A stretch of 64,000 nt of DNA, taken from Octopus sinensis (Eukaryota). Made by a program: the position numbers and the translations under genes. The stretch's first letter is position 1. The number at the start of each line of letters is the position of its first letter. The DNA is taken from the NCBI RefSeq assembly GCF_006345805.1, contig NC_043015.1:31806001-31870000 (forward strand). Direction: 5' to 3'. The notes beneath the pieces were generated by a model that ran no database searches, had not been told where the DNA came from, and was given only the letters and a program-made list of their open reading frames with translations. Below are positions 1,943 through 61,319 of the stretch, piece after piece.

Positions 1943-3199
1943 AACATGTAGTAATGTGTACCATGTGTAGTAATGTGTGTATTATATTTAGTTATGCACG
2001 CGTTATGTGTAAAGATGTGTAGCAATACTGTGTAGTAATGTCTGGGTAGAGGCATAGTAATGCGTGTGTTACGATTAGTAGTCTGTATACACGTGTTGTG
2101 TGTAGTAGTGGGTGCGTAATATGGGATGCATGCATTATGTGTAGTAATGTGTGTGTGTTGTGTTTTAGGAATGTGCACTTGTGTGTGTTCTATTGTAAGT
2201 ATGTGTGTGCTTCTGTGATAGGAATGTGTGTGCACGTGCATATGTACATGTACACGAGTATGTTATAAGAATGTGCTTGCGTGCTTTTTCTCTGTGTGTG
2301 TGTGTGTGTGTGTGTGTGTCCAATGCCTGCGTTGTAGGAATGTGGCAGATGGAGAGGGTTAGACAAATGTACACTGAGACAATTGAAGTGTGGATGCACG
2401 CATGCGAATGTGTAAGGCCTGTGTGTGTGTGTTGAGTACACGACGAAGAGGAGGCGTAGTGTGTTAGCCAAGAGAGAGAGAGAGTAGGAGAGAGCAAGAG
2501 AAGGAGAGAGAGCGAGAGCTGTGAACCAGACATGAATCATAATCACAAGGAGATTAGTGGGGGGGAGGAGAAGAAGAGGGTGACTGTTAGAGCAGCATGA
2601 TAGTGGTGGTGGTGGTGGTGGCGGCGGCAGTGGTGGTAGCAGTAGTGGTGGAGGCAATAGTAATGTTTATAGTAGTGGCAGAAGAGTTAGTTAGTAGTGC
2701 TAGTGGCGTTGGCAATGGAGAGTGCTGTAGTGGCGACGGCAGTGTTAGTGGTAGCAAAAAAAAAAACAAATTACTGTAGCAGTGGCAATGTTAGTGGTAG
2801 TGATGGGGGGGTGAGTGATGGTATAATAGTGGAGTAGGGACGACGGTGTTGGTGAGGGCAGCAGTGTCGTGGTGGTGGTGGTGGAGGTGGTGATGTGTTA
2901 GTGGGGTATACGTAGGGTTTTTGTATCTCTGGAAGTAGTGGCTACGATGCAGCAGTGTGGTGGAGGTGCTGGTGAGGAGGAGGTGCTACCGAGATGGTAG
3001 TAATGGCAGCGGTGTAGTATTGTACTAATACACATGGCGATGTGTGTCGTGTGTGCATGCGGTAGGAATGTGTATAAGTTTGTGCACGCATGTGGGAGTT
3101 CATGCATGCATGTGTGCAAAGGTATGGACAGTATGTATGTGTGTATATATATGTGTGTGTGTGTGTGTATGTATACATATGTGTGTGTGTATGTATACA

Positions 3200-3590
3200 T
3201 ATACACACACACATTATATACATAACTATATATATACACACACATTATATACATAACTATATATATATATATATACACACATATTATATACATAACTATA
3301 TATATATATATACACACATATTATATACATAACTATATATATATATATACACACACATTATATACATAACTATATATATATATATATACACACACATTAT
3401 ATACATAACTATATATATATATATATACACACACATTATATACATAACTATATATATATATATATATACACACACATTATATACATAACTATTATATATA
3501 TATATACACACACATTATATACATAACTATATATATATATATACACACACATTATATACATAACTATATATATATATATATATAATACAC
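3200..3590. repeat. Minisatellite cacacacattatatacataac(ta)n, about 10 copies
   Basis: Constant core with variable (TA)n length. Confidence 0.9.
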
Positions 3591-4359
3591 ACACACACAC
3601 GCGCGCATATAATGTCCCTGATGAGCCTCAGCTCTCAAATCAAGCCTCACCTCCTCTTCTCAGGCACATGAAACAGTCACAGAGTGTACCTTGAAATTAG
3701 AAAATAATTCACTAATTTTGCAGAAGGAATGGGAGTAAAAGAGAGAAAATGGATAATAGAGAAGAAAAAAAGGATTCGGGGGAGAATGTGTATGGAGGGA
3801 GTGAGAGATTCGAAGGAAGAGGAAAGACATGGATAAATATGGAGAAAAAAGGGCAGAGAGAGAGAGAGAGAGAAAATGAGTAATGGAAGAAGGGAGACGA
3901 GAGGTAGAGATGGAGTATGGTAGATGGGGAAGAGATGATGGAGATGAATTGAGGGAATGAAAGAAATGGAAAGTACAGCAAATGAGAAAAGAAATATTAA
4001 GGGGAAAAATAGAGATGGAGGAAAAACAAGGGAGAAAAATAAGGGAAAAAGTTGAGAGAAAAGAAAAGTTAAAAGAAATGAAAGGGAGATAAGAGATAAC
4101 AGATTGTGATATACAAGTGTATATGTGTGTGTGCGTGTGTGTGTGTGTATGTATGTCTATATGTGTGTGTGTGTGTGTGTGCATATATATATGTATGTAT
4201 ATATGCACGTGTGTTTGTATGTATGTCTATATATATGTGTGTGTGTATATATATGTATGTGTGTGTATGTCTATAAATGTGTGTGTATATATATGTGTGT
4301 GTGTGTGTATGTATATATAAATATATGTATATATATGTGTGTGTGTGTATGTCTATAAA

Positions 4360-5728: not shown

Positions 5729-6353
5729 TGCAGCAATTTGGTGTAAGCAGTTGTGATGCATCAGTGCAACAGCCGCTACATGGTCACTTGGCCTGCTAGA
5801 CATAGCAGCCAAATGTCCCTCAAACCAGTCCCGTTTCATAAAGGGGCACACTGAATAATGTTGTCCAGAGTACACTGTCCCAGAAGAAAAGGCAGTGTGG
5901 TCATGTCTGGATTGACTTTTAACTCATAGGCATGTCTGCTCTAAGATGGCAAATTAGGCCAAGTTCTTAGATTCGATAGATTGCCCTGTGGTATACTTTG
6001 CCTTTCATCCTTAAGCACCATAACATTGTAGGGCAGGTGTGAGAGGTCAGATATAGCCAGTTTGAACATGAAACAAGTAGAATAAAAGGGCCAGATATGG
6101 TCAGTTTAAACATTAAAGGGCTAATCTACCACTCCAAAACAGGAACAGTTCCTCAGACAGGTCTCTACATAATTTCCCCTCTTACAAAATTTCATTTGCA
6201 AGGCTTTGGTTGAACTAAAACTTTAGTACAAGAATATTCTTGTTCAAAATATCATGCAGTGGAATTGAACCCAGGACCTTGTAGGAGCAAGCCTAACTTT
6301 TAAACTACACAGCTACACAGCAAAGCTATCCCATAACCTTTGACCTGGTGTCT

Positions 6354-6525
6354 GTCGTTACGTTGTGAGTTCAAATTCCGCCAAGGTCGACTTTGCTTTC
6401 ATCCTTTCGGGGTCGATAAATTAAGTACCAGTTACGCAGTGGAGTCGACATAATCGGCTTAATACCTATGTCTGTCCTTGTTTGTCCCCTCTGTGTTTGG
6501 CCCCTTGTGGGTAATAAAGAAATAG
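6354..6525 (+). mobile_element. Meta-type SINE, 5'-truncated
   Basis: gagttcaaattccgccaaggtcgac...gccccttgtgggtaataaagaaata; boundaries approximate. Confidence 0.8.
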
Positions 6526-7125
6526 GTACAGGTGTGTAATTCTTCCTCATGGCCACTCTCAGGTAATTATCATTTGTGTTCTCTACCCTACCTTTTTTCA
6601 TATAACATTCATTGAGAACAGACATTCCACTGACCACAATATGAAAGCCTCCTAGAAAAAAAAATATATAAAACAAACAGCAAAAAAAGAAATAAAAAGA
6701 AAAAAAGTTAGTTTATGACATTCCTGTATAGCCAACCCCCTTGGGTCATTAGATATTGTAAAGGAAACAAATTAAAAAGAGAATCTGAAATTAGGTCCCC
6801 ACACCCAGCAATAGAAACAATAACAACAACCTGATGATCTTCTATGGGTGTGGGGGAAACTAACGCAACAATAGATCAACAAACTGTTTTTATAGATGTT
6901 AATATTGGTGTTGGTGTATGCAGTGGGTAAGGTGGGGGTGATTAAAGAGAGGAAATGACTCAGAGGGAGGAGGGAAAAAAGAGGATTTCAAAGACAAATC
7001 TTAATAAATATATTCTGATGACTGAACTGACAAGGAGATAATAGACAATCTGCTTACTTAACGATTACACCCAACGAGCATGTGAGCGTGTGTACACATC
7101 CGGTAGAATCACTTAAACAATGCCT

Positions 7126-7742
7126 ATTTCTTTACTACCCACAGTGGGATAAACACAGAAAGGACAAACAAGGACAGACAAACGGATTAAGTAGATTATA
7201 TCGACCCCAGTGCGTAACTGGTACTTATTTAATCGACCCCCCCCCCCCGAAAGGACGAAAGGCAAAGTCGACCTCGGTGGAATTTGAACTCAGAACGTAA
7301 CGGCAGACAAAATACCTATTTCTTTACTACCCACAAGGGGCTAAACACAGAGAGGACAAACAAGGACAGACAAATGGATTAAGTCGATTATATCGACCCC
7401 AGTGCGTAACTGGTACTTATTTAATCGACCCCCCCCCCCCGAAAGGACGAAAGGCAAAGTCGACCTCGGTGGAATTTGAACTCAGAACGTAACGGCAGAC
7501 AAAATACCTATTTCTTTACTACCCACAAGGGGCTAAACACAGAGAGGACAAACAAGGACAGACAAATGGATTAAGTCGATTATATCGACCCCAGTGAGTA
7601 ACTGGTACTTATTTAATCGACCCCCGAAAGGATGAAAGGCAAAGTCGACCTCGGTGGAATTTGAACTCAGAACGTAGCGGCAGACGAAATACCGCTAAGC
7701 ATTTCGCCTGGCATGCTAACGGTTCTGCCAGCTCGCCACCTT
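7126..7742 (-). mobile_element. Meta-type tRNA-derived SINE, head-to-tail trimer with one head
   Basis: Three ~190-bp units, one tRNA-like head. Core GCCTTTCATCCTTTCGGGGTCGAT resembles the Meta/Sauria-type central domain (family label from memory). TSD acttaaacaat(g/a)cct at 7111-7125 and 7743-7757. Confidence 0.85.
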
Positions 7743-8667
7743 ACTTAAACAATACCTGATATTTTTCATAAGTGCAAGTGTGTTTATATGTGTGCATATA
7801 CAGGTTTCAAATTTTGGAACCAGGCCAGTAATTTCGGGGGGAAGGGGATAAGTCAATTACATCAACCTCAGTGTTCAACTGGTACTTATTTTATTGACCC
7901 CAAAAGGATGAAAGGCAAAGTCAACCCCGGCAGCATTTGAACTCAGAATGTAAAGGCAGACGAAATGCCGCTAATCACTTTGCCCGGCGTGCTAACGATT
8001 CTGCTAGCTTGCAGTCTCACCATCTTTATGTATGTAGATATAAACATACATATTAATCCATATATATATATATGGATGTGCACACATGTATGCATATACA
8101 AAATAAAAGAAACTAGGTAAAGGTGCTTATATATGATCGCTCAACTTGTTTAGGCAAAGCAGCTAAATCTCCCTCATACTTTTCAAAAACAAAAACACAA
8201 AAAAGGAATAAAACCAGGGTACACAATAACTAATTGAAAAAAAAAAAAGATGGAATTGTCATAGTTGGAATGCCCTTGATCAAAGGTCCACTGAACCTGG
8301 GCCAACTTGGAGCTAAACAACAACAATAAAAATTCAAATTTGTAAAGTGTTCAACGAATACTAAGATTTTAGTTGCTAATATAGAAGACAACTGAAGATG
8401 GCAGAATTGCTAAGCATGCCAAGCAAAATGCTTAGCGGCATTTTGTCCATCTTTACGTTCTGAGTTCAAATTCTGCCAAGGTTAATTTTGCTTTCATCCC
8501 TTCAGGGTCGATAAAAATAAGTACAAGTTTTGCACTGGGGTTGATGTCATTGACTATCCCCAACCACCAAATTTTTAGGCCTTGTGCCTATAATAGAAAG
8601 AAATATATAGAAGACAACTTCAAACCCTAACACCAGGATACAATAACGTATATGAGTGGACATGAAG

Positions 8668-14306: not shown

Positions 14307-15546
14307 TTAAACAGCTAGCCTTGTCACATTCTGTGTCACACTGAACTGTTCTGAGAACTATGTTAAGGATAAGCGTGTCTGTGGAGTGCTCAACCACTTG
14401 CATGTTTATTTCAAGAACAGGCTCTTCCATTGATCTGATCAATTGGAACCCTCATTGTCATAACCAGACTGCCAGTTCTATTAGATCAGTTCTAACTCAT
14501 TCATTTTTTATCATCATCATCATCATCATCTTTTAACGTCCGCTTTCCATGCTAGCATGGGCTGGACGATTTTGACAGAGGGCTGGTGAACCAGACGGCC
14601 GCACCAGGCTCCAATCTTGATCTGGCAGAGTTTCTACAGCTGGATGCCCTTCCTAACGCCAACCACTCTGAGAGTGTTGTGGATGCTTTTCACGTGCCAC
14701 TCAGGCGGTACTGGCAATGACCTTGCTCGAATCTTTTTACACATGCCACCGGCACAGGTGCCAGTAAGGCGACGTTGGTAACGATCACACTCGAATGGTG
14801 CCCTTTTACGTGCCACTGGCATAGAAGCCAGTTGGCTGATCTGGCAACGATCAGATATAATATTTTGATATTATAACTATTTTCAATTCTTGCAAACAGC
14901 AATAGATGCACTTCATCCAAAGCATTTTATTGTTTAGTCCAAAGTCAGCACAGACTAACCAACCAAAACTATCCCTTCTTTTCATATATCAGGGACCACA
15001 TTAGTCAATGAGTCTTTTTGGCTTCTAGATGGCAACGTGTCATTTCAGGGACATCTGGTTCCTACTTCTAGCATGCCTAACAACTCCTAGATATCTATTA
15101 AATCACAAATTTTAACCAACATCTAAAATCACATGCTACACTCATCTGGTTTTCTGTACCACAACCATGTTGTTACCGATATATAAGATATTATATACAC
15201 ATGCACACCGTATCTAAACAATTCTGATGTGTCTGCAGCAATAACTCACAGAGTAATAACAAAGGATAGACAAGCTCCCTGAAATTAATCCAAAGACCAC
15301 ACATGGAACTGTTATTGATTCTGGTGCTTTGTACTGGTCAAGTCTACATATATCCGACCAGCAGAGAACTGCCTATCAATACAAGCGTTCTACAGTTGCA
15401 GGTTATATTTGCATATGGATTAATGAAATTACATGCAGTGGAGTGAAATTCAAGATTCCATCTGATGGCCACACCACTCTTTCCTGTGCGTTGATGTTAT
15501 GGATTTCTTTTCTTGCCACTAACCATAGTGCTGCATCACAATTAAA

Positions 15547-15550
<4 letters not shown>

Positions 15551-15592
<42 letters not shown>

Positions 15593-16672
15593 TATACTAT
15601 ACACACACACACATATATATATATACACACAAAAAATATATATACACATATATATACATACACACACACACACATATATAGATATATATGCACATATACA
15701 TATATATATACATATATATACACACATGTATACACATATATATATATACATAGATACATATATATACACATATATATACACACACATATATATACACACA
15801 TATATACACATATATATATACATATACACATATATATATATACATATACACATATATATATATACATATACACATATATATATATACATATACACATATA
15901 TATATATACATATACACATATATATATATATATATACATATACACATATAGATATACATATACATATACACATATAGATATACATATATGTACATATATA
16001 TACACATATATATACATACATATATATATATACACATATATATATACACACATATACATACACATATATATATACATATACACATATATACATACATATA
16101 TATATATATACACACATATATACATACACATATATATACATACATATATATATATACACACATATATACATACACATATATATATATACACATATATATA
16201 CATACACATATATATATATACATATATATACATACACATATATATATATACATATATATATATACATACACATACATACACATATATATATATACATAAT
16301 ATATATATATATACATATATATATATACATACACATACATACACATATATATATATACATACATACACATATATATACATATACATATATATATACATAC
16401 ACATATATATACATACACATACATACACATATATACATATATATATACACATATAATATATACATATATATACATATATATACATACACATATATATACA
16501 TACAATATATATACATATACATATATATACATACACATATATATACATACACATATATATAATACATATATATACATACACATATATATATACATATGAT
16601 ACATACACATATATATATACATATAATACATATACATATATATATATACATATAATACATATACATATATAC

Positions 16673-16705
<33 letters not shown>

Positions 16706-16765
16706 ATACATATACATATATATATATATACATATAATACACACACACACACACACATATATATC
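15551..16765. repeat. 1.2-kb compound (TA)n/(CA)n microsatellite
   Basis: Source of the 363-460 aa pseudo-ORFs in the track. Confidence 0.95.
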
Positions 16766-17528
16766 TGTAATATAATATACGACAATTATTCGGTTGCCTT
16801 AATAAAACTCCTAGTTTCAGATTTCGGAGCGGAAACCTGCACCAGCATCTCTTCAGTTATTCAGGCAATTAAAATATGCTATGAAAACGACCGTTATTAA
16901 GACAACAGAGCAATTATAGAATGACCGTTAAATAAGGGGAAAAAAAAAACCGAAGGGAAGGAAGTAAAAAGTAAAGGAGTAAAAATGCTCATAGCAAGCG
17001 CGTATGTGCGCATGTGCATACATGCATGCACACCCACGTACATGTGTCTATATGCATATGCTCACTGAGATTCACATGAAACACACATGCACAGCCACAC
17101 ATACACCAAAATAGATGCACATATATATATGCAACCATGCACGCACACGTATAGAAATTCACACACATGCATGCACACACACACACACACGTGCACATAC
17201 CAATATGCACACAGTTATATACAAATACATGTCTATAAGTACGCACATGCTATATGCTCGCTCACACTCACATGAAACCCATGTATGTACACCCACACAT
17301 ACATGCAACCATTCACATGTACATGTACATATATACATACTCGCACACACACACACAAAATGTACATAAATGTATATCTGCAAGCACGTGTGCACACACA
17401 TGTGCAGTTATATTCATATGCACAACTAAAATATGTGCATGCTATATGTGCATATACCCAATTACACTCGCATGGAACACTCATATGTACATTAAAAACT
17501 TAAAAGTAAAAACAATTTTAAACTGTCA

Positions 17529-17566
<38 letters not shown>

Positions 17567-17699
17567 TTATGCTTATGCATATTTACATATATTTTCATAT
17601 ATATATATTTATATTTTTAATACAATAACTATTCTACACATGTATATATCTTTCTGAAGAATTTTTTCTGATATTAATTTCCTGATATTATTTCACAAT

Positions 17700-17980
17700 A
17701 CACACACACATACACACATACACGTATATATACATATACACACACATACATATATACATTTACACACATATGCACACACACACATACATTTACACACATA
17801 TGCACACACACACATATATATTTACACACATATGCACACACACACATTTACACACATATGCACACACACACATATACATTTACACACATATGCACACACA
17901 CACACATTTACACACATATGCACACACACACACATACATTTACACAGATATGCACACACACACACACACGCACACACACC
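17700..17980. repeat. CA-rich minisatellite (tttacacacatatgcacacacac...)
   Basis: About 8 variable units. Confidence 0.85.
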
Positions 17981-18769: not shown

Positions 18770-19186
18770 TATTTCTTTACTGCCCACAAGGGGCTACACA
18801 CAGAGGGAACAAACAAGGAGAGACAAACGGATTAAGTCGATTATATCAACCCCAGTGTGTAACTGGTACTTGTTTAATCGACCCCGAAAGGATGAAAGGC
18901 AAAGTCGACCTCGGCAGAATTTGAACTCAGAACGTAGCGGCAGATGAAATACCTATTTCTTTATTACCCACAAGGGGCTAAACATAGAGGGGACAAACAA
19001 GGACAGACATAGGTATTAAGTTGATTACATCGACCCCAGTGCGTAACTGATACTTAATTTATCAACCCCGAAAGGATGAAAGGCAAAGTCGACCTCGGAG
19101 GAATTTGAACTCAGAACGTAGCAGCAGACGAAATACCGCTAAGCATTTCGCGTGGCGTGCTAACGATTCTGCCAGCTCACCGCCTT
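18770..19186 (-). mobile_element. Meta-type SINE dimer
   Basis: Two units, single head; 16-bp TSD ctttaacttaatt(g/a)ct at 18754-18769 and 19187-19202. Confidence 0.85.
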
Positions 19187-34552: not shown

Positions 34553-34961
34553 TATTTCTTTACTACCCACAAGGGGCTAAACATAAAAAGGACAGACAAA
34601 CGGATTAAGTTGATTATATCGACCCCAGTGCGTAACTGGTACCTATTTAATCGACCCCGAAAGGATGAAAGACAAAGTCGACCTCGGCGGAATTTGAACT
34701 CAGAACGTAATGGCAGATGAAATACCTATTTCTTTACTACCCACAAGGGGCTAAACACAGAGGAGACAAACAAGGACAGACAAACGGATTAAGTCGATTA
34801 CATCGACCCCAGTGCGTAACTGGTACTTATTTAATCGACCCCCAAAAGGATGAAAGGCAAAGTCGACCTCGGTGGAATTCGAACTCAGAACGCAGCGACA
34901 GACGAAATACCGCTAAGCATTTCGCCCGGCGTGCTAACGTTTCTGCCAGCTCACCGCCTTA
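34553..34961 (-). mobile_element. Meta-type SINE dimer
   Basis: Two units, single head; perfect 14-bp TSD atgaggtaaatacc at 34539-34552 and 34962-34975. Confidence 0.85.
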
Positions 34962-35799: not shown

Positions 35800-36716
35800 C
35801 ACCGTGATCGACCAGGCTATCAGATGTTGCTACACATCGCTGATCACAATGCGCTTCGCATTGCTTTAGCCTTCAAATGACGCCACCCTGCTGGCTAAGT
35901 GAGCAGGCCAACAGAAGACAGAGTGAGAGAAAGTTGTGGCGAAAGAGTACAGCAGGGATCACCACCACCCCCGGCCGAAGCCTCGTGGAGCTTTAGGTGT
36001 TTTCGCTCAATAAACACTCACAACACCCGATCTGGGAATCGAAATCGCAAGTCCACTGGGCCATTGCACCTACACACACACACACATATATATATGTATA
36101 TATATATATCCAGACAGCTAGGTGGTGCAACATCAATATTCTCCCCTATGTTTGTGAAATTTTTGTATCTCTGCAGTAAGGCTTCATATCGACACACGCC
36201 AGCTTAATTCAATTCGTCCTTAGTGGAAAGACACCTGTTATTATGTCCTGTTATTATTTTTATTACATTTATATTTGTGTAACATTGTCCGTTTTTTCCG
36301 TCCTTGTTTTTGTATACATTCCCTGCTTTCTTGCAAGGAATCTAATGCTCTTAGCTTAGTTTTTCTTTGGGGCTGGCCAGATTGGAGCAATCTCAAGAGG
36401 AGAGGCTGGTGTGCATGGGTGTCTGCTGGTCTTCCATAAACAAACTTACCCTGACTGCTGCCTCTAGGCGCAATCTCATGGTCATTCATGACCAAAAGGG
36501 TCTTTATCACCAAACATGCACACACGCAAGCTAACACAGCCACACATGTACACACACACACAACCAAGCTGTGTATGTATGTGTGTTGTGTGTGTACAGA
36601 GCAATCTATGATATGAAATTAATATTGGTTTCAAATTTTGGTACAAGACCAGCAACTTTGGGGGAGGGGGCAAGTTGATTCACTGACTACAGTGATCAAT
36701 TGGTACTTATTTTATC

Positions 36717-36911
36717 AAAGAAACCCTGGACGGGGGATCACTCGGCTCGTCCGTCGATGAAGAGCGCGACTATCCGCGTGAACTGATGCAAATTGCAGGA
36801 CTCAGTGAACATCGACACCTCAAACACACATTGCGGGCCCCGGGATCCCATCGTCCCGGGGCCCCATCTGGTCGAGAGGCGAAATAGCCCCGTGTGGGTA
36901 GTAAAGAAATA
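36717..36911 (+). mobile_element. Chimeric retroposon: 5.8S rRNA + 3' tail of the Meta-type SINE, with 15-bp TSD
   Basis: 5.8S is followed directly by tagccccgtgtgggtagtaaagaaata (SINE tail). Flanks ggtacttattttatc (36702-36716) and ggtatttattttatc (36912-36926). Confidence 0.85.
36721..36884 (+). rRNA. Dispersed full-length 5.8S rRNA copy (retropseudogene)
   Basis: GGATCACTCGGCTCGTCCGTCGATGAAGAGCGC...AATTGCAGGAC...GAACATCGACAC...CACATTGCGG and the GC-rich 3' hairpin (11-bp stem 36835-36845/36854-36864) are 5.8S hallmarks. No ITS, 18S or 28S flanks. Apparent CG>CA changes at 36822 and 36826 relative to the usual TCGAACGCAC motif. Confidence 0.93.
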
Positions 36912-37224
36912 GGTATTTATTTTATCGACCCCAAAAGGATGAAAGGCAAAGTCAACCTCAGTGGAATTTGAACTCAGAACGTCAAGACAGGAAATGCCGC
37001 AGAGCATTTTGCTGGCATGCTAACATTCTGTCAGCTCACCGCCTTTGTCTATATTCATAATGGCACTTCCAAGAATTCAGATTATTGATTCAGTCTACAT
37101 AATTAATGATGTTAAATAGATTCAGTCTTACCATTTTTCTACTTTCACTTTTCAATACGATACTAATAACCACTTGATACTTAGCTTTCTTATTTATTAA
37201 ATTTGATAAACTTCAAATACCTTT

Positions 37225-45959: not shown

Positions 45960-46760
45960 AGTCAGAGAGCTGGCAGGATGTTTAGAGTACAGGAGAGTTC
46001 AAATCTTGCCATGGTCAACTTTGTCTTTCATCCTCACCAGTCAAGTACTAGAGTCAATGGTACTGACCACCACCCCACTCCACTCACAACTGCTATCATT
46101 GTACCTAAATCAAAAACCATTATTACCATTATCATTATTATTATTGTGGCGACGTTCTGAGTTCAAATTCTGCTGAGGTCGACTTTGCCTTTCATCCTTT
46201 TGGGGTCAATAAATTAAGTACCAGCTGCATACTGGGGTCGATCTAATCGACTGGGGCCCCTCCCCCAAAATTTTGGGCCTTGTGTCTAGAATAGAAAAGA
46301 ATATTATTGTGGCGAGTCGGTAGAGTCGTTTGCACACTGGGCAAAATGCTTAGTGGCATTTTGTCCATCCTTACATTCTAGTTTCAAATTGCACCAAGGT
46401 TGACTTTGCCTTTCATCCTTTCGGAGTCAATAATTTAAGAAACAGTGAAACCCTGGGGTTGATGTAATCGACTAGTTCCCTCTCCCAAATTTAAGGCCTT
46501 GTGTCTATAGTAGAAAGGATCATCATCATCATCATCATCATTACAGTGGCAAGCTGGCAGAATTGTTAGCAAGCCAGGCAAAATGCCGCTAGGCATTTTG
46601 TTCATTTTTATGTTCTGTGTTCAAATTCTGCCAAGGTCGACTTAACCTTTCATCCTTTCGGGGTTGATAAAATAAGCACCAGTTGAGCACTGGAGTCAAC
46701 ATAATGGACTTACTCACCCCGAAATTACTGGCTTTGTGCCAAAATTTGGAACCAACATTT
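45960..46760 (+). mobile_element. Tandem cluster of about four older Meta-type SINEs with (att/cat)n tails
   Basis: Repeated gagttcaaat...gactttgcctttcatcc...ccttgtg(t/c)ct units separated by att/cat tracts; boundaries approximate. Confidence 0.7.
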
Positions 46761-47479
46761 ATTATTATTATGGAAGAATTTTGTATGTTTCAGATACATC
46801 AATTCAAAAAAACCAAATCAATCATCCAGCTCGGATTTCCATTTGGAATCAAATTTCACTTGTGTTGACAAATTTTAATTTCCCTTTAGCAAAAAACATA
46901 AAAATCATAAATCCAATTCTTATAATCAACACCACCATCACCAACCACTCCACTTCTTCCTTGAATATTTGTGATTTTATCAAAACATTAAAGCAATATA
47001 ACTACTTGGCTTTTTTCAGGAGATATTAAAAGAAATGAACACAGAAAAAGATTTTTTTCTTTTTCTGTGTTCATTTCTTGACCAATGTAGGTGCTGGCAT
47101 GTTCACATGTTTGAGCTTTTAATTTTTTTTTTTATAACTAAATGTCCTCCCTATCATCAACCAGTTTACTGAATGCATTTTATTGAGACATCAGCTCTAG
47201 AGAGTTTGTTATGTCCTTGATTGACAAGACTCAACCACATGCCTTCTTCAGCAATTTTATAAAGAGTACTGGATACATTTTATTACAGTGCCAGTATTAT
47301 TTGGAATTGCCTTGTACCTTGTAAAATGAAAGAGTTCCCATTACTCTACAATGTGTTTATTCACTCAAGGCAATGTAACAGAGAAGGCAGGTGGTAGAAG
47401 AGAGACTGTGATAACCAAAGAAAGACCAAAATGGGTGGATGAAAGGAATAAGACCACTACAAGGTTCAGTGCTTGTTGT

Positions 47480-50673: not shown

Positions 50674-52499
50674 CACTAGGCCACACACACACACGCATAA
50701 TTTTCTGCACCACTACAACACATTAATGGTTCGTCTTTCCATCCCAGAACTACAACATTCTAATGTTTTAGAGAGACAAAAGAAAGGAAGATTGAACCCG
50801 GAACCATGTGGTTGGCAAGCTAGTTTCTTATCACATTCCATACAATGTTTACGCTGCACCAAGCACACTGGTCTGTCCTTGGCTCCGGGGATATATAAAT
50901 ATATCAGTTTTTCTATAGGTGTCTGGAGACATGGGTCGTGATAAGGGTCCCTTAATGATCCTTCTCACAACACAACATAGTTGAGAGAGAGAGAGTGGGG
51001 GAGAGAAAGTGGAGGTGAGGTCTGTTATATATTGTAAATATTTAAATGCACATGCAAATAACTTGTAGACGCAAATGCAAATACCGAACAACACAGAAAA
51101 CATGTAAGCATAGACACAAAGACAAACAAAGACAAACAAAAAGAAGAAGCAAACATCGACAAGTAACTAATAGAATAAAAAAACTATGCAAATAGTCCAC
51201 CAAAAGCGAATTCAAAAATACAGACACAGACTTCGTAAACACAAATACACGTGTCTCTAGATATACACAAACACCAGAACAGAGCCTCTCTCTCTCTCTG
51301 CCTGTCTGTGTGTCTCTCTGTGTGTCTGTCTCTCTCTTTCTCTCTGTGCATGTGTGTGTGTGTGTGTGCGTACACACTCACTCACACACCCTATATACAC
51401 ACACATTTAGCGACAGAAGAAGCAGTATTTAATACACACACACAAAATTACTCATCGTTGTTGTTTACAATAGTTAAACTGTCATATTGTAAGGTGGAGT
51501 GCGGGAAGGAGGAGGGAGAGGATTGGAGGAGGAGGAGGAGGAAGAGGAGACAGATGGTGAGAGAAAGAGAGAAGGGGAGGTGACAAAAAGTAGAAAGAAG
51601 AGAGAGAGGAAGAGAGAAGAAAATGTGAAAAGAAGAGAGAGAACAAAGACAAGTGAGGGGTGAACGGAAGAACAAAGACCGTGGTGGTAAGAGAACGAAG
51701 TAAGGAGAGATGTAGGGAGAGAGAGAACGAGAAGTAAAGGAAGTATGGGAGGGAGGGAGAGAGAGAAGTAAAGAAAGCAAAGGTAGTTATGGGTGGGAGA
51801 GAGAGAGAGAGAAGGAGTGATAAAACAGATGTTTTCTAACACAAAAGAATCTCTAACTTTATAAACAAGCTGAAATGACAGACTGTGTATCTCACCTATG
51901 TAATTATTACACGGAGGGTTGGAAAACTTCGATTCATTGAGATTATCCATGCAATTATTGGACAAATTCTCCCTCAGAAGTGTTTGAAAATTAAGAACAC
52001 CCAATCAAGAGAGATAACTCCAACGTAAATTTGGGGGTGGGGAGGCGGATGACTCACGTCTGAGTCATGTTTCAGATTTCAATACCTGCCAAACAAGGCT
52101 GCTATATGGTCGCTCCGATTGTTAGAAATAGCTGTCAGATTTACCTGAAATAACACCACTACAGCTTGCAGTAAAGGCAGGACACATCAGACAAGATGAT
52201 CCTTGATAATTATGAAAAGGAGGAAGGATATCGACGCCCAGGATGGACTGATCACAGACAGGTCCGCTGGAATCAGGATTGAGCTGGAGCTGAACAACAA
52301 CAAAAAACCGATTCTCTTTCAGCGACAATGAAGTGTCAGTTTATTTCATGGAACTGATCGGATTTCACAAAGCAGGGGAAGGATGGATGGATGGATGGAT
52401 ATGTTTCTTTATTAGCCACACAGGGCTGAACACAGAGGGGACAAAATACAAAGTAGAGCCTTTCTTTTTGGGGAGGAAAGAAAAAAAGTGGGGGTAGAA

Positions 52500-52717
52500 T
52501 TTAGATAGATAGATAGATAGACAGATAGGTAGATAGATAGACAGATAGATAGATAGGTAGAGAGATAGATAGATAGATAGATAGATAGACAGATAGATAG
52601 ATAGATAGATAGATAGACAGATAGATAGACAGACAGATAGATAGACAGACAGATAGATAGACAGACAGACAGACAGATAGATAGGTAGACAGATAGATAG
52701 GTAGACAGATAGATAGG

Positions 52718-52756
<39 letters not shown>

Positions 52757-52884
52757 GTAGGTAGGTAGATGGTAGACAGATAGGTAGACAGATAGATAGA
52801 CAGATAGATAGATAGATAGATAGATAGGTAGATAGATAGACAGATAGGTAGGTAGATAGACAGACAGATAGAGAGAGAGAGAGA
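52500..52884. repeat. (GATA/GACA/GGTA)n tetranucleotide array
   Basis: Direct inspection. Confidence 0.95.
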
Positions 52885-54136
52885 TGCGGAGTGGATTATT
52901 CTAGCGGAAGTAATGTGCCAAGTGGGTTGAATATATAACGCACGTCAGTTATTATATACACACACATCAAATACACATATATATGTTGTTCAGTTTGTCA
53001 TAGATGTTTGCAGCGAAGAGAGCAATCCTGCTGCACACAATGCAACTGCATGCAGGCTGGGCTGCAACTAAAGCAGTTGGCAGGAAAACTGAGCCTCTCT
53101 AATTAAAAGGTGTTTACGCATGTCAGTGCTGGCAGCACATAACCCACATGTGAGAAGTGGTTCTAGAACTACACTATGGACATGACAGGAGATGGTGGTG
53201 GAGGTGGTAACCACAGACTTTCATCATCATCGTCGTTGTCATCGTTTTAACGTCCACTTTACAGCACCAAGCATGAGTTGAATAGACATTGTAGGGTCAG
53301 ATTTTCTATGGCTGGATGCCTTTTTTTGTCACCTGACTGTTACCAAGTAGGGCAATATTTCCCCCCTGGCTGGATATATTTTCATGAAAGATTAGAAACG
53401 AAAGACACTGCTTGTAGGACAGTGGCACTTGTTTACAACTATGACATGAAGTCGAGGCAAAGAGACAGTTACATACACACACACCATAGTATTCTTTCGG
53501 TTTCCACCTACCAAATCCACTCACAAGGCTTTTTGGTTAACCCAGGATTATAGTAGAAGACACTTGCCCAAGGTTCCACACGATGGGACTGAACTCAAAA
53601 CCACGTGGTTGGGAAGTAAACTTCTAAACACAAAACCATGCCTGCACCAACCATCCTTGTGCAAGCAATAAACATAAAGCATCAAAAGGTGATTAACAGA
53701 AGGAAATCAGTGTGTTTGTTGTTTAGCCTCATGTCAGCCATGACTGAGCAGACTTATGAACAGAGGAATTCCATCCATGACCATCCATTTTATATATCAC
53801 AGATTATATTTTCCCCTCATCCCTTCATGGGGAGAGCAGATTGATAAAAAAGAATAATCCATGGTGAGTGGTGGATTGATCGGATTGACTGAAACACTTG
53901 TCGTAAACAACGGAGTAAGAATCCGTCCAAGATTGTTACTGGGCAAAAGACTTGGCAGCATTTGTTCTGACTTTACATCCTGAATTCAAATGCTGCTGAG
54001 GTCGACTTTGTCCATCTTCTGGGGTCGATAAAATTAGTACCATTCAAGTACTGGGATCAATATGACTACTTCCCCCACTAAAACTTTAGGCCTTTTAATA
54101 GAAAGAATTATTACATTGATATTATATAGAGATTAT

Positions 54137-58709: not shown

Positions 58710-58899
58710 AAATACCTATTTCTTTACTACCCACAAGGGGCTAAACTCAGAGGGAACAAACAAGGACAGACAAACGGATTAAGTCGATTATATCGACCCC
58801 AGTGCATAACTGGTACTTAATTAATCAACCCCGAAAGGATGAAAGGCAAAGTCGACCTCGGCGGAATTTGAACTCAGAACATAGCGGCAGACGAAATAC
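58710..58899 (-). mobile_element. Meta-type SINE, headless unit-length monomer
   Basis: Begins and ends with aaatac (58710-58715, 58894-58899), exactly the repeat unit of the dimers. Confidence 0.8.
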
Positions 58900-61319
58900 T
58901 CTCTGATCTTCATCTCAGTCCTAGAACATTTCTCTCTCTCTCTCCCACTCTCCCAACCAGCACATCATCTCCCTATTTTCTGATTTATCTACAGGTTTAT
59001 TCAACAACTGCTGCTCTCCATCCTTCTTGTATGAGCTATTTCTTTTACCCCTCTCCTAAACTGATGTTTGCCACTGACCACATCTCCACCCCATCTACAT
59101 TCACTACATTAACCTCTACCCCACCATTCTCTAACCACTCTCCTCTCACACTCCAATGAACCCACCTACCCACACCTCACCATATTCAGTCTGCAATCTC
59201 TCAAACATACACCTTTTCGTACCTGGAGAGAATATTCTAATACATTATCACCAACATCTTTATCTGATTTCCAGCAAATATCAGCCCCCCCTTCCTATAT
59301 AATACCAGGTAGCCATGTAGCAAGACACCTGTCCTTCTATCATACTTGTGCCTTTCGATACCTGGCATAAAGCCACCACCACCCCTCCATTAGTACAGTT
59401 CTTTTAGTGAAGTGTTCTGTCAATGTTCTTTTGGTTCCTGCATCACATGCACATTCATAAACACAAGGCATTGATTTGCATACGTATGCATGTGTGTGTG
59501 CATTCAGTTCTTCTCTTTCTTGCAAGTTACTTGGAGACTTCAATGGTTCCAGTGTCGTAAAAAAAGAACCCAGTACACTCAACCGTTAGTGCTTGAGAAG
59601 AGCTTCCAGCCACAGAACCACTTCAAAGCAGGCAATGGAACTCAACGCAGTCCTTCAGTTTCTCAAATGCTCTCAAACCATCCAACCCCATGCCAGCATA
59701 GAAGACATATATCTTAAATGAAGGCGGTGAAGATTATATAAAGTCCAGTAAGTAACTTTCCAAAAAGAAACCCGTTTTTTAAATTTTTGATTGGCTATTT
59801 TTAACATGGGAGCGACATTGGTCAACAGTTTAACAATGGCAGATGAAGGGGCCCTCTATAGTTTCACTGCTCGACCTGTTAAAATACAATCACATGGATC
59901 TGGGTTTAGTCACACTGCATGGCACCTTGAGAAAGTGTCTCTTCCTGTAACCTTGAGCCAACCTAAGCCTTGTGAGTGGATTTGGTAGATGGAAACTGAA
60001 AGGAGCCTGGTGGGTGTGGGTGTCTTTTTTGGTCCCCACAACCACTTGACAACTGGTGTTGGTGTGTTTATATCCCTGTAACTAATCAGTTTAGTAAAAG
60101 GGGCCAACAGAATAAATACCAGGCTTAAAAAAAAAAGTACGGGGATTGGTTCGACAAAAAAATTTTCAAAGGTAGTGCCCCAACTTGGCCACAGTCTAGT
60201 GGAGGTGAATGGCTTAGTGGCTAAGGTGTTGAATACATGATCATTAGGTTGTGGTTTCAATTCCTGGATCGAGCGATGCGTTGTGTTCTTGAGCAAAACA
60301 CTTCATTTCACCTTGCTCCAGTCCTCTCAGCTGGAAAACGTAAGTAATCCTGCAACAGACTGACGTTCCATCCAGGTGGGGAATTTCTACGCCACTGAAA
60401 CCAGGAAACCGGCCCTTATGAGCCTGACATGGCTCGAGAAGGAACAGCAGTCTAATGACTGAGACTAGTAAAAGACGAAAGATGAAAGATTGCATAAAGC
60501 AGTCCAGGAAACACTAACCAAGACAGGTTAGTACTGGATTAGTCATTTTTGATTGTCTTTTCTCAATCAGGAATAATCTGAGGCTTAACAATTACAACAA
60601 CCAATGGCTAAGAATACCATGAATCAGTGCCCAGGACCGCAAATAGGTACTATCAACAATCGATGTAGCGTAATTGCTTCATTATATATAATCCTAGCAG
60701 GTAATGTGGGTATTTGGAAAATACCTCATGGAGTGATGATTGTGCCCTGCTTAGTTACAAGCTGCCCTTTGGCAAGGGACATCAGCCATTCAATCACCCC
60801 ATCAAGGATCAGCAAATTCACAGGACTGTGACATGGCAGATTGTGAAGAGGTAGTGGAGGAGCTCAACTGAGCTGATAATATTGATGCTGAACAGAGGAA
60901 TCGTAGAAGGTCAAAGGTTAAGATCATCAAGCATTATCAAGAGAACAACTGAAACACATCCACAAGAGAAGAATCCGTGGTTGTGCAATCAGCTAATGAG
61001 AAATTCACTGTGACTCAATCTCCCAATCCAAATTCCTAATAATGGAATTGGATGGTGACAGAGAATCATGGGAATCCGTGAACACATATATAGTCCTATT
61101 TTCAGTTAATATGCTCTAACTCTGAATAAACACACATCTTTCTTCATCCTTTTGATACCAATCCACCCTAGGCTGTCCCTGGTTCCATGACACAAACTGC
61201 CTGTTTTATAGTGGTCTAAATTTAAATTCTATGTTAATCTGTTCCAAACACCAGCTTAATAACGATAAAGTTATTTTAATATACTTCATGATTTTGAAAT
61301 TTAATTGAAACAAAAGGCA

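What the first reader, a model, noticed from the sequence alone, without database searches (positions are those of the whole stretch)
36702..36926. Retrotransposed 5.8S rRNA-SINE chimera: a candidate 5.8S-headed retroposon
Seen: a full-length 5.8S rRNA (36721-36884, only 4 extra 5' nt, no ITS1/ITS2/18S/28S) is joined directly to the last 27 nt of the Meta-type SINE tail (tagccccgtgtgggtagtaaagaaata). It is flanked by a 15-bp TSD, ggta(c/t)ttattttatc, and sits antisense inside another SINE. The TSD length (14-16 bp) and GGTA-type target match the ordinary copies of this SINE in the window. The tail-side TSD copy reads ggtattt like the SINE junction, whereas the original target read ggtactt, as expected if the RNA 3' end paired with the target. 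Established: mature-RNA ends plus a TSD are the signature of LINE-mediated TPRT; snRNA/LINE chimeras (U6-L1) arise by RNA ligation or template switching; rRNA-headed SINEs are best known for 5S, which carries an internal Pol III promoter, while 5.8S is a processed Pol I product. Inference: the LINE serving this SINE captured mature 5.8S RNA through the SINE tail, either once or as a hidden family. Two CG>CA changes suggest this copy is decaying.
Basis: partly seen in the sequence, partly recalled or inferred. Interest (0 to 1): 0.83.

Follow-up and report, generated by a model that had tools for sequence, protein, structure and literature searches.

The report
One-off 5.8S rRNA–SINE-tail chimeric retrocopy
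A complete copy of the small ribosomal RNA 5.8S, fused to the last 27 bases of a local SINE, was pasted by a retrotransposon's copying enzyme into an older SINE; this is a real and unusual example of a known accident, and nothing shows it founded a new mobile family.

Summary
Rfam finds one full-length 5.8S rRNA at 36722-36881 (95 bits) and no 18S, 28S or other ncRNA in the window. It abuts a 27-nt stretch that matches 26/27 the 3' end of an abundant tRNA-headed SINE ("SINE-A"). The unit interrupts an older antisense SINE whose 15-bp core is duplicated on both sides, a genuine TSD. The target (GGTACTT) fits the strong GG(T/C)A preference of ordinary SINE-A insertions.

I recovered true rDNA units of relatives (91% identical 5.8S). 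They continue into conserved ITS2 and an A-rich ITS1. The window copy has at most 1 nt of possible ITS2 and 4-5 nt of possible ITS1, so a mature or near-mature RNA was copied. Five CpG transitions mark it as a decaying pseudogene.

Best reading: one target-primed reverse transcription event. The LINE enzyme started on the SINE (or LINE) tail and switched template to the 3' end of 5.8S rRNA, as in U6/L1 chimeras.

The "5.8S-headed retroposon family" idea is unsupported: no B box, no T4 run, one copy in 64 kb, and no host genome was reachable. New member of a known kind; moderate interest.

The parts
36627..36701 (-). 3' part of the old host SINE ('SINE-B': tRNA-type head, shared core, tail ending ...CCAAAATTTGAAACC)
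   Evidence: Aligns with uninterrupted SINE-B copies at 7800-8010(-) and 46545-46770(+). CpG o/e is 0.00, so the element is old.
36702..36716 (.). 5' copy of the target-site duplication, GGTACTTATTTTATC (host SINE core, reverse complement of GATAAAATAAGTACC)
   Evidence: It matches the host-family consensus (GTACC).
36717..36720 (+). Extra AAAG between the TSD and the 5.8S (AAAGA if the 5.8S is taken to start at the Rfam position 36722). Either a 5.8S-L-like remnant of ITS1 or untemplated nucleotides.
   Evidence: rDNA relatives show the same pattern of A-run, non-A, A-run, CCCTGG at the ITS1/5.8S border. Inference only.
36721..36884 (+). Full-length 5.8S rRNA retrocopy (pseudogene)
   Evidence: Rfam 95.3 bits, model 1-154/154. 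It is 148/162 identical to the 5.8S of true rDNA units L001-L010. It carries five CpG transitions at sites invariant in the relatives: 36790, 36822, 36826, 36866 and 36869. One compensatory pair, 36843/36856, lies in the 3' hairpin.
36885..36911 (+). Last 27 nt of the SINE-A (or partner-LINE) 3' tail, ending at the element's normal terminus ...AAAGAAATA
   Evidence: 26/27 identical to SINE-A positions 208-234. Position 8 is G here and T in all 11 ordinary tails.
36912..36926 (.). 3' copy of the target-site duplication, GGTATTTATTTTATC (one C>T difference at 36916)
36927..37045 (-). 5' part (tRNA-type head and start of core) of the host SINE-B
   Evidence: CpG o/e 0.44.

Best explanation
This is a single target-primed reverse transcription (TPRT) event that made a two-part chimeric retrocopy.

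1. The endonuclease of the LINE that mobilises SINE-A nicked its preferred GGTA(T/C)TT-type target. Here the target is GGTACTT, the antisense core of an old SINE-B.
2. Reverse transcription started at the normal 3' terminus of a SINE-A RNA, or of the LINE RNA carrying the same tail.
3. After 27 nt the enzyme left that template and continued on the 3' end of a mature or near-mature 5.8S rRNA. It copied that RNA to its 5' end, possibly the 4-5 nt longer 5.8S-L form.
4. Second-strand cleavage 15 bp away produced the TSD.

The product has no Pol III promoter and has since decayed by CpG transitions. It is a dead-on-arrival pseudogene, not a mobile element.

Shown: the anatomy, the TSD, the target type, the mature-like ends and the decay. 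Inferred: the template switch (as opposed to RNA ligation before reverse transcription), the identity of the donor RNA (SINE or LINE), and the nature of the AAAG.
For: The 5.8S is full length with no other rDNA nearby.

True rDNA units of relatives were recovered. After GAGAGGCG they continue with GAAAAT(G/T)GCATGT..., a conserved ITS2 start. Before the 5.8S they have A-rich ITS1. The window instead reads GAGAGGCG-AAA followed at once by the tail, and TSD-AAAG-AAACCC on the 5' side.

The tail matches SINE-A positions 208-234 and ends exactly where SINE-A ends.

One 15-bp TSD pair flanks the whole unit, there is none at the internal junction, and the host SINE is continuous once the insert is removed.

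TSDs of ordinary SINE-A copies are 14-16 bp and begin with GG(T/C)A far more often than chance, P about 4e-11.

In at least three arrays the tail is joined directly to an internal GGTATTT of another SINE-A unit, inside a single TSD pair. The units come from different source sequences in two of these arrays. This is compatible with a jump-prone enzyme.

The CpG content of the 5.8S part (o/e 1.09) resembles SINE-A copies (0.88-1.24), not the old host SINE (0-0.44) or the window as a whole (0.41).

Literature: LINE chimeras with U6, other snRNAs, U3, 5S, 28S, Y, 7SK, 7SL and tRNA are well documented (bioRxiv 10.1101/2025.02.02.635956; PMC4476161 and PMC2104539, listed).
Against: Only one locus is available, and the host's own rDNA, genome and long reads could not be reached.

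There is no microhomology at the junction: SINE-A reads GTT|TAGCCCC and the chimera reads AAA|TAGCCCC. At most the T could be shared with ITS2 of the relatives.

The partner LINE is not in the window. None of the 10 ORFs tested (of 21 ORFs of 120 aa or more) has a Pfam match.

The tail differs from all 11 SINE-A tails at one base.

RNA ligation before reverse transcription would give the same DNA.

Mature 5.8S is normally base-paired with 28S inside the ribosome. Pol I nucleolar RNAs are under-represented among human retropseudogenes (PMC5322556), so the event is a priori rare.

The SINE-A multimers can also be explained by nested insertion at GGTATTT with homology-mediated 5' joining, so they do not prove template jumping.
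Confidence: 0.8

Rival explanations
1. A chimeric RNA came first. 5.8S rRNA was ligated to a 27-nt 3' fragment of SINE/LINE RNA (an RtcB-type ligation, as shown for U6/L1), and the ligated RNA was then retrotransposed in one uninterrupted TPRT.
For: The DNA outcome is the same as for template switching. There is no microhomology at the junction. RNA ligation is demonstrated for U6/L1 (PMC6789731, listed). If true, 27 nt of tail would suffice for recognition by the LINE enzyme.
Against: From my own knowledge, not tested here: RtcB needs a 2',3'-cyclic phosphate or 3'-phosphate donor, whereas mature 5.8S 3' ends are made by exonucleolytic trimming and carry 3'-OH. The cyclic-phosphate intermediate, 7S pre-rRNA cut at site C2, would carry much more ITS2 than the 1 nt or less seen here.
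Confidence: 0.12
2. This is a copy of a propagating '5.8S-headed' non-autonomous retroposon family. A master chimera is transcribed and repeatedly mobilised through its 27-nt tail.
For: The tail is intact to the last base, and the target and TSD are typical of active SINE-A. The G at tail position 8 could be a family-diagnostic base. SINEs with 5S, 28S and snRNA heads exist.
Against: The unit has no B box within 2 mismatches, whereas the SINE-A control has AGTTCGAATTC at 2 mismatches. It has no T4 run. 5.8S is cut from a Pol I precursor and has no promoter of its own. There is only one copy in a window that holds about 15 SINE-A units. A 2024 review table of rDNA inside TEs lists only 5S and 28S cases (PMC10946416). 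Copy number in the genome could not be tested (searches returned nothing).
Confidence: 0.06
3. Two separate events. A severely 5'-truncated (27-nt) SINE-A insertion came first, and a 5.8S cDNA was later inserted exactly at its 5' edge. Alternatively, the 5.8S was captured as filler DNA during break repair.
For: Heavily truncated tail-only copies exist, for example the roughly 45-nt relic at 52402-52445.
Against: There is no second TSD around the 5.8S. The 5.8S sits exactly between the 5' TSD copy and the tail. A second hit at that very base is improbable.
Confidence: 0.03
4. Assembly or read chimera joining rDNA-derived reads to SINE sequence.
For: rDNA and SINEs are both high-copy and prone to misassembly.
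Against: A misjoin would not create a precise 15-bp duplication of the host SINE core. It would not give mature-like 5.8S ends without ITS, end exactly at the SINE 3' terminus, or show CpG decay relative to rDNA.
Confidence: 0.02

Closest known systems
U6/L1 and other small-RNA/LINE-1 chimeric retrocopies in mammals (U1, U2, U4, U5, U6, U3, 5S, 28S, Y, 7SK, 7SL, tRNA; see 10.1101/2025.02.02.635956, PMC4476161, PMC6789731)
   Same: The 5' part is a copy of an abundant cellular non-coding RNA with an intact 3' end. The 3' part is a 5'-truncated 3' end of the retroelement, in the same orientation. One TSD pair flanks the whole unit. The target is typical of the element's endonuclease. The product does not propagate.
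   Different: The captured RNA is 5.8S, which is not among the partners listed in the papers I read. The 3' part is a non-poly(A) 'stringent' tail of only 27 nt shared with a SINE. The target is GGTA(T/C)TT, not TT/AAAA. The host is an invertebrate, not a mammal.
MINE and bi-/tripartite chimeric retrogenes of Magnaporthe grisea (MGL LINE; PMC2104539)
   Same: These are chimeras made by a non-L1 LINE through template jumps during reverse transcription, and they show that the phenomenon is not restricted to L1.
   Different: The LINE clade and host differ. The 5' partner there is the WEIRD RNA, not an rRNA.
rRNA- and snRNA-headed SINEs: SINE3/5S-SINEs, SINE28 (28S 3' end), SINEU (PMC4994717, PMC4494074, PMC10946416)
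   Same: The architecture is a small-RNA-derived head joined to a LINE-type tail, and such families are thought to start from exactly this kind of template-switch product.
   Different: Those are multi-copy families with a means of transcription. This unit lacks a B box, is a single copy in the window, and shows no evidence of propagation.
Tailless and processed retropseudogenes of small RNAs (PMC5322556)
   Same: Both are retrocopies of non-coding RNAs made in trans by LINE machinery and flanked by TSDs.
   Different: Those copies are primed directly on the cellular RNA and are usually 3'-truncated. Here the 3' end of the 5.8S is intact and priming went through a retroelement tail. That study reported no tailless element from the abundant nucleolar RNAs in human, apart from a few 5'-truncated 18S and 28S copies and snoRNA-derived ones.

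Membership tests
LINE-mediated bipartite chimeric retrocopy (U6/L1-type) | The 5' module is a copy of a cellular RNA with its natural (mature) 3' end, in the same orientation as the 3' module | tested here: met
   Rfam model 1-154/154 on the + strand. rDNA relatives continue into ITS2 (GAAAAT(G/T)GCATGT) where the window switches to the tail after GGCG-AAA.
LINE-mediated bipartite chimeric retrocopy (U6/L1-type) | The 3' module is a 5'-truncated retroelement ending at the element's normal 3' terminus | tested here: met
   26/27 match to SINE-A positions 208-234 of 234, followed directly by the TSD.
LINE-mediated bipartite chimeric retrocopy (U6/L1-type) | A single TSD pair flanks the whole chimera, with none at the internal junction | tested here: met
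   The 15-bp TSD is a true duplication of the host SINE core. No repeat flanks the 5.8S alone.
LINE-mediated bipartite chimeric retrocopy (U6/L1-type) | The target site and TSD length are those of ordinary copies mobilised by the same LINE | tested here: met
   TSDs are 14-16 bp. GG(T/C)A follows 10 of 15 tail ends, P about 4e-11 for independent arrays.
LINE-mediated bipartite chimeric retrocopy (U6/L1-type) | L1 hallmarks: a poly(A) end and a TT/AAAA nick site | tested here: not met
   The unit ends ...AAAGAAATA with no poly(A), and the target is GGTACTT. It therefore works like a U6/L1 chimera but was made by a different, tail-specific LINE.
LINE-mediated bipartite chimeric retrocopy (U6/L1-type) | The partner LINE carries the same 3' tail | not testable with these tools
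   No LINE ORF was found in the window (only 10 of the 21 ORFs of 120 aa or more were scanned). No host genome is available.
SINE family (here: '5.8S-headed SINE') | An internal Pol III promoter in the head | tested here: not met
   No B-box match within 2 mismatches, whereas the SINE-A control has AGTTCGAATTC at 2 mismatches. A-box matches are uninformative in both. From my own knowledge, 5.8S is processed from a Pol I transcript.
SINE family (here: '5.8S-headed SINE') | Many copies with independent TSDs | not testable with these tools
   One copy in 64 kb. Scans of the metagenome, genome and viral collections returned 0. The protein-trick searches found only true rDNA of relatives.
SINE family (here: '5.8S-headed SINE') | A LINE-type 3' tail used for TPRT | tested here: met
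Functional 5.8S rRNA gene (RF00002 in an rDNA unit) | Lies between ITS1 and ITS2 with SSU and LSU rRNA genes nearby | tested here: not met
   There is no SSU or LSU in the window. Compare the true unit L004: SSU, 5.8S, LSU.
Functional 5.8S rRNA gene (RF00002 in an rDNA unit) | Conserved motifs and pairs are intact | tested here: not met
   CTCGAACGCA reads CTCAAACACA. Rfam flags three non-standard pairs. Five CpG transitions fall at sites invariant in the relatives.

The most novel reading that the evidence does not exclude
The locus is one copy, or the founder, of a hidden family of 5.8S-headed non-autonomous retroposons. Such a family would be mobilised through a 27-nt tail module and transcribed by read-through or by a cryptic promoter. 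It would be the first SINE-like family with a 5.8S head, and it would show that about 27 nt of tail suffice for recognition by its LINE.
Probability: 0.06. Interest if true: 0.75.

Novelty: new member of a known kind. Interest (0 to 1): 0.42.

Why it matters
The locus is a clean natural example of a tail-specific, non-L1 LINE system capturing a cellular RNA in an invertebrate genome. The captured RNA is a Pol I-derived rRNA that is normally locked in the ribosome, and it is absent from the lists of LINE-chimera partners in the papers I could read. The event illustrates the first step by which new SINE heads are thought to arise: a template switch from a tail onto an abundant small RNA.

As a by-product it documents properties of the machinery. 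These are a strong GGTA(T/C)TT target preference, 14-16 bp TSDs, and recurrent joining of the tail to an internal GGTATTT.

It does not by itself change any concept. Its value would rise sharply only if more copies exist.

Tried and rejected
Copy number, the empty site and the host rDNA therefore could not be addressed.

2. Searching the sense-frame translation of the 5.8S found nothing. The antisense frame did find spurious ORFs on real rDNA of relatives. The exhaustive representative search gave nothing closer.

3. The organisms behind the rDNA relatives could not be named. None of these loci contains the SINE core or the tail.

4. Full-text search for the SINE core and tail strings gave 0 papers. 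I therefore could not confirm the 'Meta-type' or octopod labels.

5. A tail hairpin as a recognition element: only a 4-bp stem, z -1.1 to -1.6, not significant.

6. tRNA detection in the SINE heads by ARAGORN found none.

7. A LINE ORF in the window: none of the 10 ORFs scanned, of 21 ORFs of 120 aa or more, has a Pfam match.

8. The idea that GGTATTT belongs to the SINE's own 3' end was rejected. In three TSD-verified insertions the GGTA motif is also present in the 5' TSD copy.

9. The 19-nt extension of the repeat (AATT versus AATA) is not seen at other insertions, so I treat it as chance.

10. One multi-locus Rfam call failed internally and was repeated on L004 alone.
Full report
**What is there.** Rfam finds a single family above its gathering score in the 64-kb window. 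It is a full-length 5.8S rRNA at 36722-36881 on the + strand (95.3 bits, E 1.3e-22, model positions 1-154 of 154). A permissive scan adds only sub-threshold miRNA hits on TG/CA microsatellites. It finds no SSU, LSU, 5S, U6 or tRNA.

Three bases after the Rfam end, at 36885-36911, lies TAGCCCCGTGTGGGTAGTAAAGAAATA. This 27-mer has 11 further matches with 3 or fewer mismatches in the window, against none expected from shuffles. Reading those places shows that each is the 3' end of an ordinary SINE of about 234 bp, which I call SINE-A. It has a tRNA-type head with a B-box-like AGTTCGAATTC, a conserved core ...GACTTTGCCTTTCATCC...GTCGATTAAATAAGTACC..., and a body ending ...GTAGTAAAGAAATA without poly(A). 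BLAST aligns the 27-mer to SINE-A positions 208-234, 26/27 identical.

**The TSD is real, with one caveat.** The flanking 15-mers are ggtacttattttatc (36702-36716) and ggtatttattttatc (36912-36926), which match at 14 of 15 positions. The motif occurs 33 times in the window with 2 or fewer mismatches, because it is the reverse complement of the SINE core GATAAAATAAGTACC. Its mere recurrence therefore proves nothing.

The decisive point is alignment A1. The sequence left of the insert (36627-36716) and right of it (36912-37045) are the 3' and 5' parts of one older SINE on the minus strand ("SINE-B", with a different tail ...CCAAAATTTGAAACC). The two pieces overlap by exactly these 15 bases, whereas six uninterrupted SINE copies carry the 15-mer once. 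The insert therefore sits antisense in a SINE core and duplicated 15 bp of it. No repeat flanks the 5.8S alone.

**The machinery is the same as for ordinary SINE-A copies.** TSD-verified SINE-A insertions have 14-16 bp TSDs:
- aggtattgtttaagt / aggcattgtttaagt
- agtaattaagttaaag / agcaattaagttaaag
- ggtatttacctcat
- tatataaacgtgt

Of 15 tail ends in the window, 10 are followed by GG(T/C)A and 7 by GGTATTT. Counting only the 10 independent arrays, at least 5 are followed by GGTA, against a background of 0.0028 per site (binomial P about 4e-11). In three verified cases the GGTA motif is also present in the 5' TSD copy, so it is a property of the target, not of the SINE end. The chimera's target, GGTACTT, fits this preference.

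The CpG content of the 5.8S part (o/e 1.09) is like that of SINE-A copies (0.88-1.24). It is unlike the host SINE-B (0-0.44) and the window as a whole (0.41). This is consistent with insertion during the SINE-A wave into a much older element.

**Are the ends those of the mature RNA?** No cephalopod or other host DNA could be reached by pattern scans. I therefore translated the antisense frame of the 5.8S copy, which is open for 48 codons, and searched it as a protein. It hit four clusters of spurious ORFs. Their contigs were fetched as L001-L010, from ENA metagenomes including a TARA scaffold, two NCBI assemblies and a Logan run. In L004 Rfam shows a true rDNA unit of SSU, 5.8S and LSU, and the 5.8S regions of the other loci align with it along their whole length. 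Their organisms could not be named.

Their 5.8S is 148/162 (91.4%) identical to the window copy. It shares the unusual start AAACCCTGGACGGGGGATCAC. In all of them GAGAGGCG is followed by GAAAAT(G/T)GCATGT..., a conserved ITS2 start, and AAACCCTGG is preceded by A-rich ITS1 (for example AAAAC-AAAA-CCCTGG).

The window instead reads GAGAGGCG-AAA and then the tail. Upstream it reads TSD-AAAG-AAACCCTGG. So at most one base (the T of TAGCCCC) could be ITS2. The 4-5 extra 5' bases could be the end of ITS1, as in the long 5.8S-L form, or untemplated additions. That choice is inference. By homology, ITS2 does not begin with the tail sequence.

**Pseudogene status and origin.** Relative to the relatives, five differences are CpG transitions at positions invariant among them: 36790, 36822, 36826 and 36866 G>A, and 36869 C>T. 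Two of them destroy the universal GAACGCA motif. By contrast, 36843 A>G and 36856 T>C form a compensatory A-U to G-C change in the 3' hairpin (11-bp perfect inverted repeat). This indicates that the source was a functional rDNA of a different lineage from the relatives, and that later decay was mainly by CpG deamination.

**Mechanism.** The anatomy has four elements:
- a cellular RNA with its natural 3' end
- a 5'-truncated retroelement tail in the same orientation
- one TSD pair around both parts
- the element's usual target

This is the anatomy of LINE-made chimeric retrocopies, known for U6 and many other small RNAs with L1 (10.1101/2025.02.02.635956, read; PMC4476161, listed) and for a fungal LINE (PMC2104539, listed).

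I therefore propose the following. The bottom strand was nicked at GGTACTT. Priming occurred on the tail of a SINE-A or partner-LINE RNA. After 27 nt the enzyme switched template to the 3' end of 5.8S rRNA and copied it to the 5' end. Second-strand cleavage followed 15 bp away.

RNA ligation before reverse transcription, as shown for U6/L1 in PMC6789731, would give the same DNA. I rate it lower because mature 5.8S ends in a trimmed 3'-OH rather than a cyclic phosphate (my own knowledge, not tested here).

In three arrays (7125-7742, 18770-19186, 34553-34960) the tail is joined directly to an internal GGTATTT at SINE-A position 50 of a further unit, all inside one TSD pair. Units within two of these arrays are no more alike than units of different arrays. 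This fits a jump-prone enzyme whose cDNA end ...AAATACC mimics a nicked target. Nested insertion with homology-mediated joining would look the same, so it is supporting evidence, not proof.

**What is not supported.** The unit has no B box within 2 mismatches and no T4 run, and 5.8S is cut from a Pol I precursor. There is one copy against about 15 SINE-A units in the window. A propagating "5.8S-headed SINE" is therefore unsupported, though untestable here.

In TPRT the target strand is the primer and is retained. In two other SINE-A insertions the tail-side copy differs away from GGTATT. What is curious is that all three TSD mismatches fall in TSD positions 3-5 next to the tail, roughly 0.04 by chance. 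I leave that unexplained.

The tail's G at position 8, against T in all 11 SINE-A tails, leaves open that the donor was the unseen partner LINE. A diverged relic tail at 52402-52445 also has G. The partner LINE is not in the window. Literature names RTE and Dong elements as potentially active in octopus (PMC9115989). However, neither the host's identity nor the "Meta-type" label could be verified.

**Comparison and novelty.** In the papers I could read, LINE-chimera partners include U1, U2, U4, U5, U6, U3, 5S, 28S, Y, 7SK, 7SL and tRNA, but not 5.8S. Pol I nucleolar RNAs are under-represented among human tailless retropseudogenes, and no 5.8S case was reported. A 2024 review table of rDNA inside TEs lists only 5S and 28S.

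The locus is thus a new member (new captured RNA, new LINE system, invertebrate host) of a known kind of event, and not a new kind. It fails the L1-specific features (poly(A), TT/AAAA), so it works like a U6/L1 chimera without being one.

**Verdict.** Interest is moderate (0.42). The family reading has a probability of about 0.06 and would be of high interest if true.

Noticed in passing
window 7125-7742(-), 18770-19186(-), 34553-34960(-); solitary units 58717-58900(-), 6347-6524(+): SINE-A forms partial multimers: a full unit followed by one or two units of positions 50-234. The junction is always the tail ...AAATA joined to internal GGTATTT(C/T)(G/A)TCTGCC, and each array lies inside one TSD pair. 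Units in two arrays are as diverged from each other (88%, 92.5%) as units of different arrays. This points to template jumps, or to nested insertion at the preferred GGTATTT target.
   Followed up: partly
window, all SINE-A 3' junctions (e.g. 34552, 58716, 62552, 6525, 7124): There is a strong target preference: 10 of 15 tail ends are followed by GG(T/C)A and 7 by GGTATTT (background GGTA 0.0028 per site). This suggests a sequence-selective endonuclease, or annealing-guided priming by the unknown partner LINE.
   Followed up: yes
TSD pairs at 7741-7755/7110-7124, 19187-19202/18754-18769, 36702-36716/36912-36926: All three mismatches seen in five TSD pairs are T/C differences at TSD positions 3-5 next to the tail, and none lie in the remaining roughly 10 positions. 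The direction is inconsistent. This may be a footprint of the priming step or chance (about 0.04).
   Followed up: partly
window 52402-52900(-): A diverged relic of the same tail (CAGCCCTGTGTGGCTAATAAAGAAACA, about 45 nt of homology) is attached to a non-SINE-A upstream sequence. It lies next to a long (TCTA/TCTG)n microsatellite and shares the G at tail position 8 with the chimera.
   Followed up: no
window about 15300-17900 and 3100-4300: TG/CA-rich low-complexity blocks produce long ORFs on both strands (up to 460 aa, no Pfam match) and dozens of sub-threshold mir-297/mir-466 hits. These are artefacts of composition.
   Followed up: partly
L001-L010 (rDNA of unnamed marine organisms; e.g. 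L004 1-4839): rDNA units were recovered whose 5.8S shares the window's unusual 5' start and is 91% identical. The SSU match in L004 spans 2605 nt, which is long. ctg82210c carries two 5.8S loci about 12 kb apart. The organisms could not be identified with these tools.
   Followed up: partly
window 36717-36723 and 36698-36701/36908-36911: The extra 5' bases plus the 5.8S start read AAAGAAA, identical to the AAAGAAA in the tail. In addition, the host AATT before the TSD resembles the tail end AATA, which stretches the apparent repeat to 19 nt. Both are probably coincidental.
   Followed up: partly
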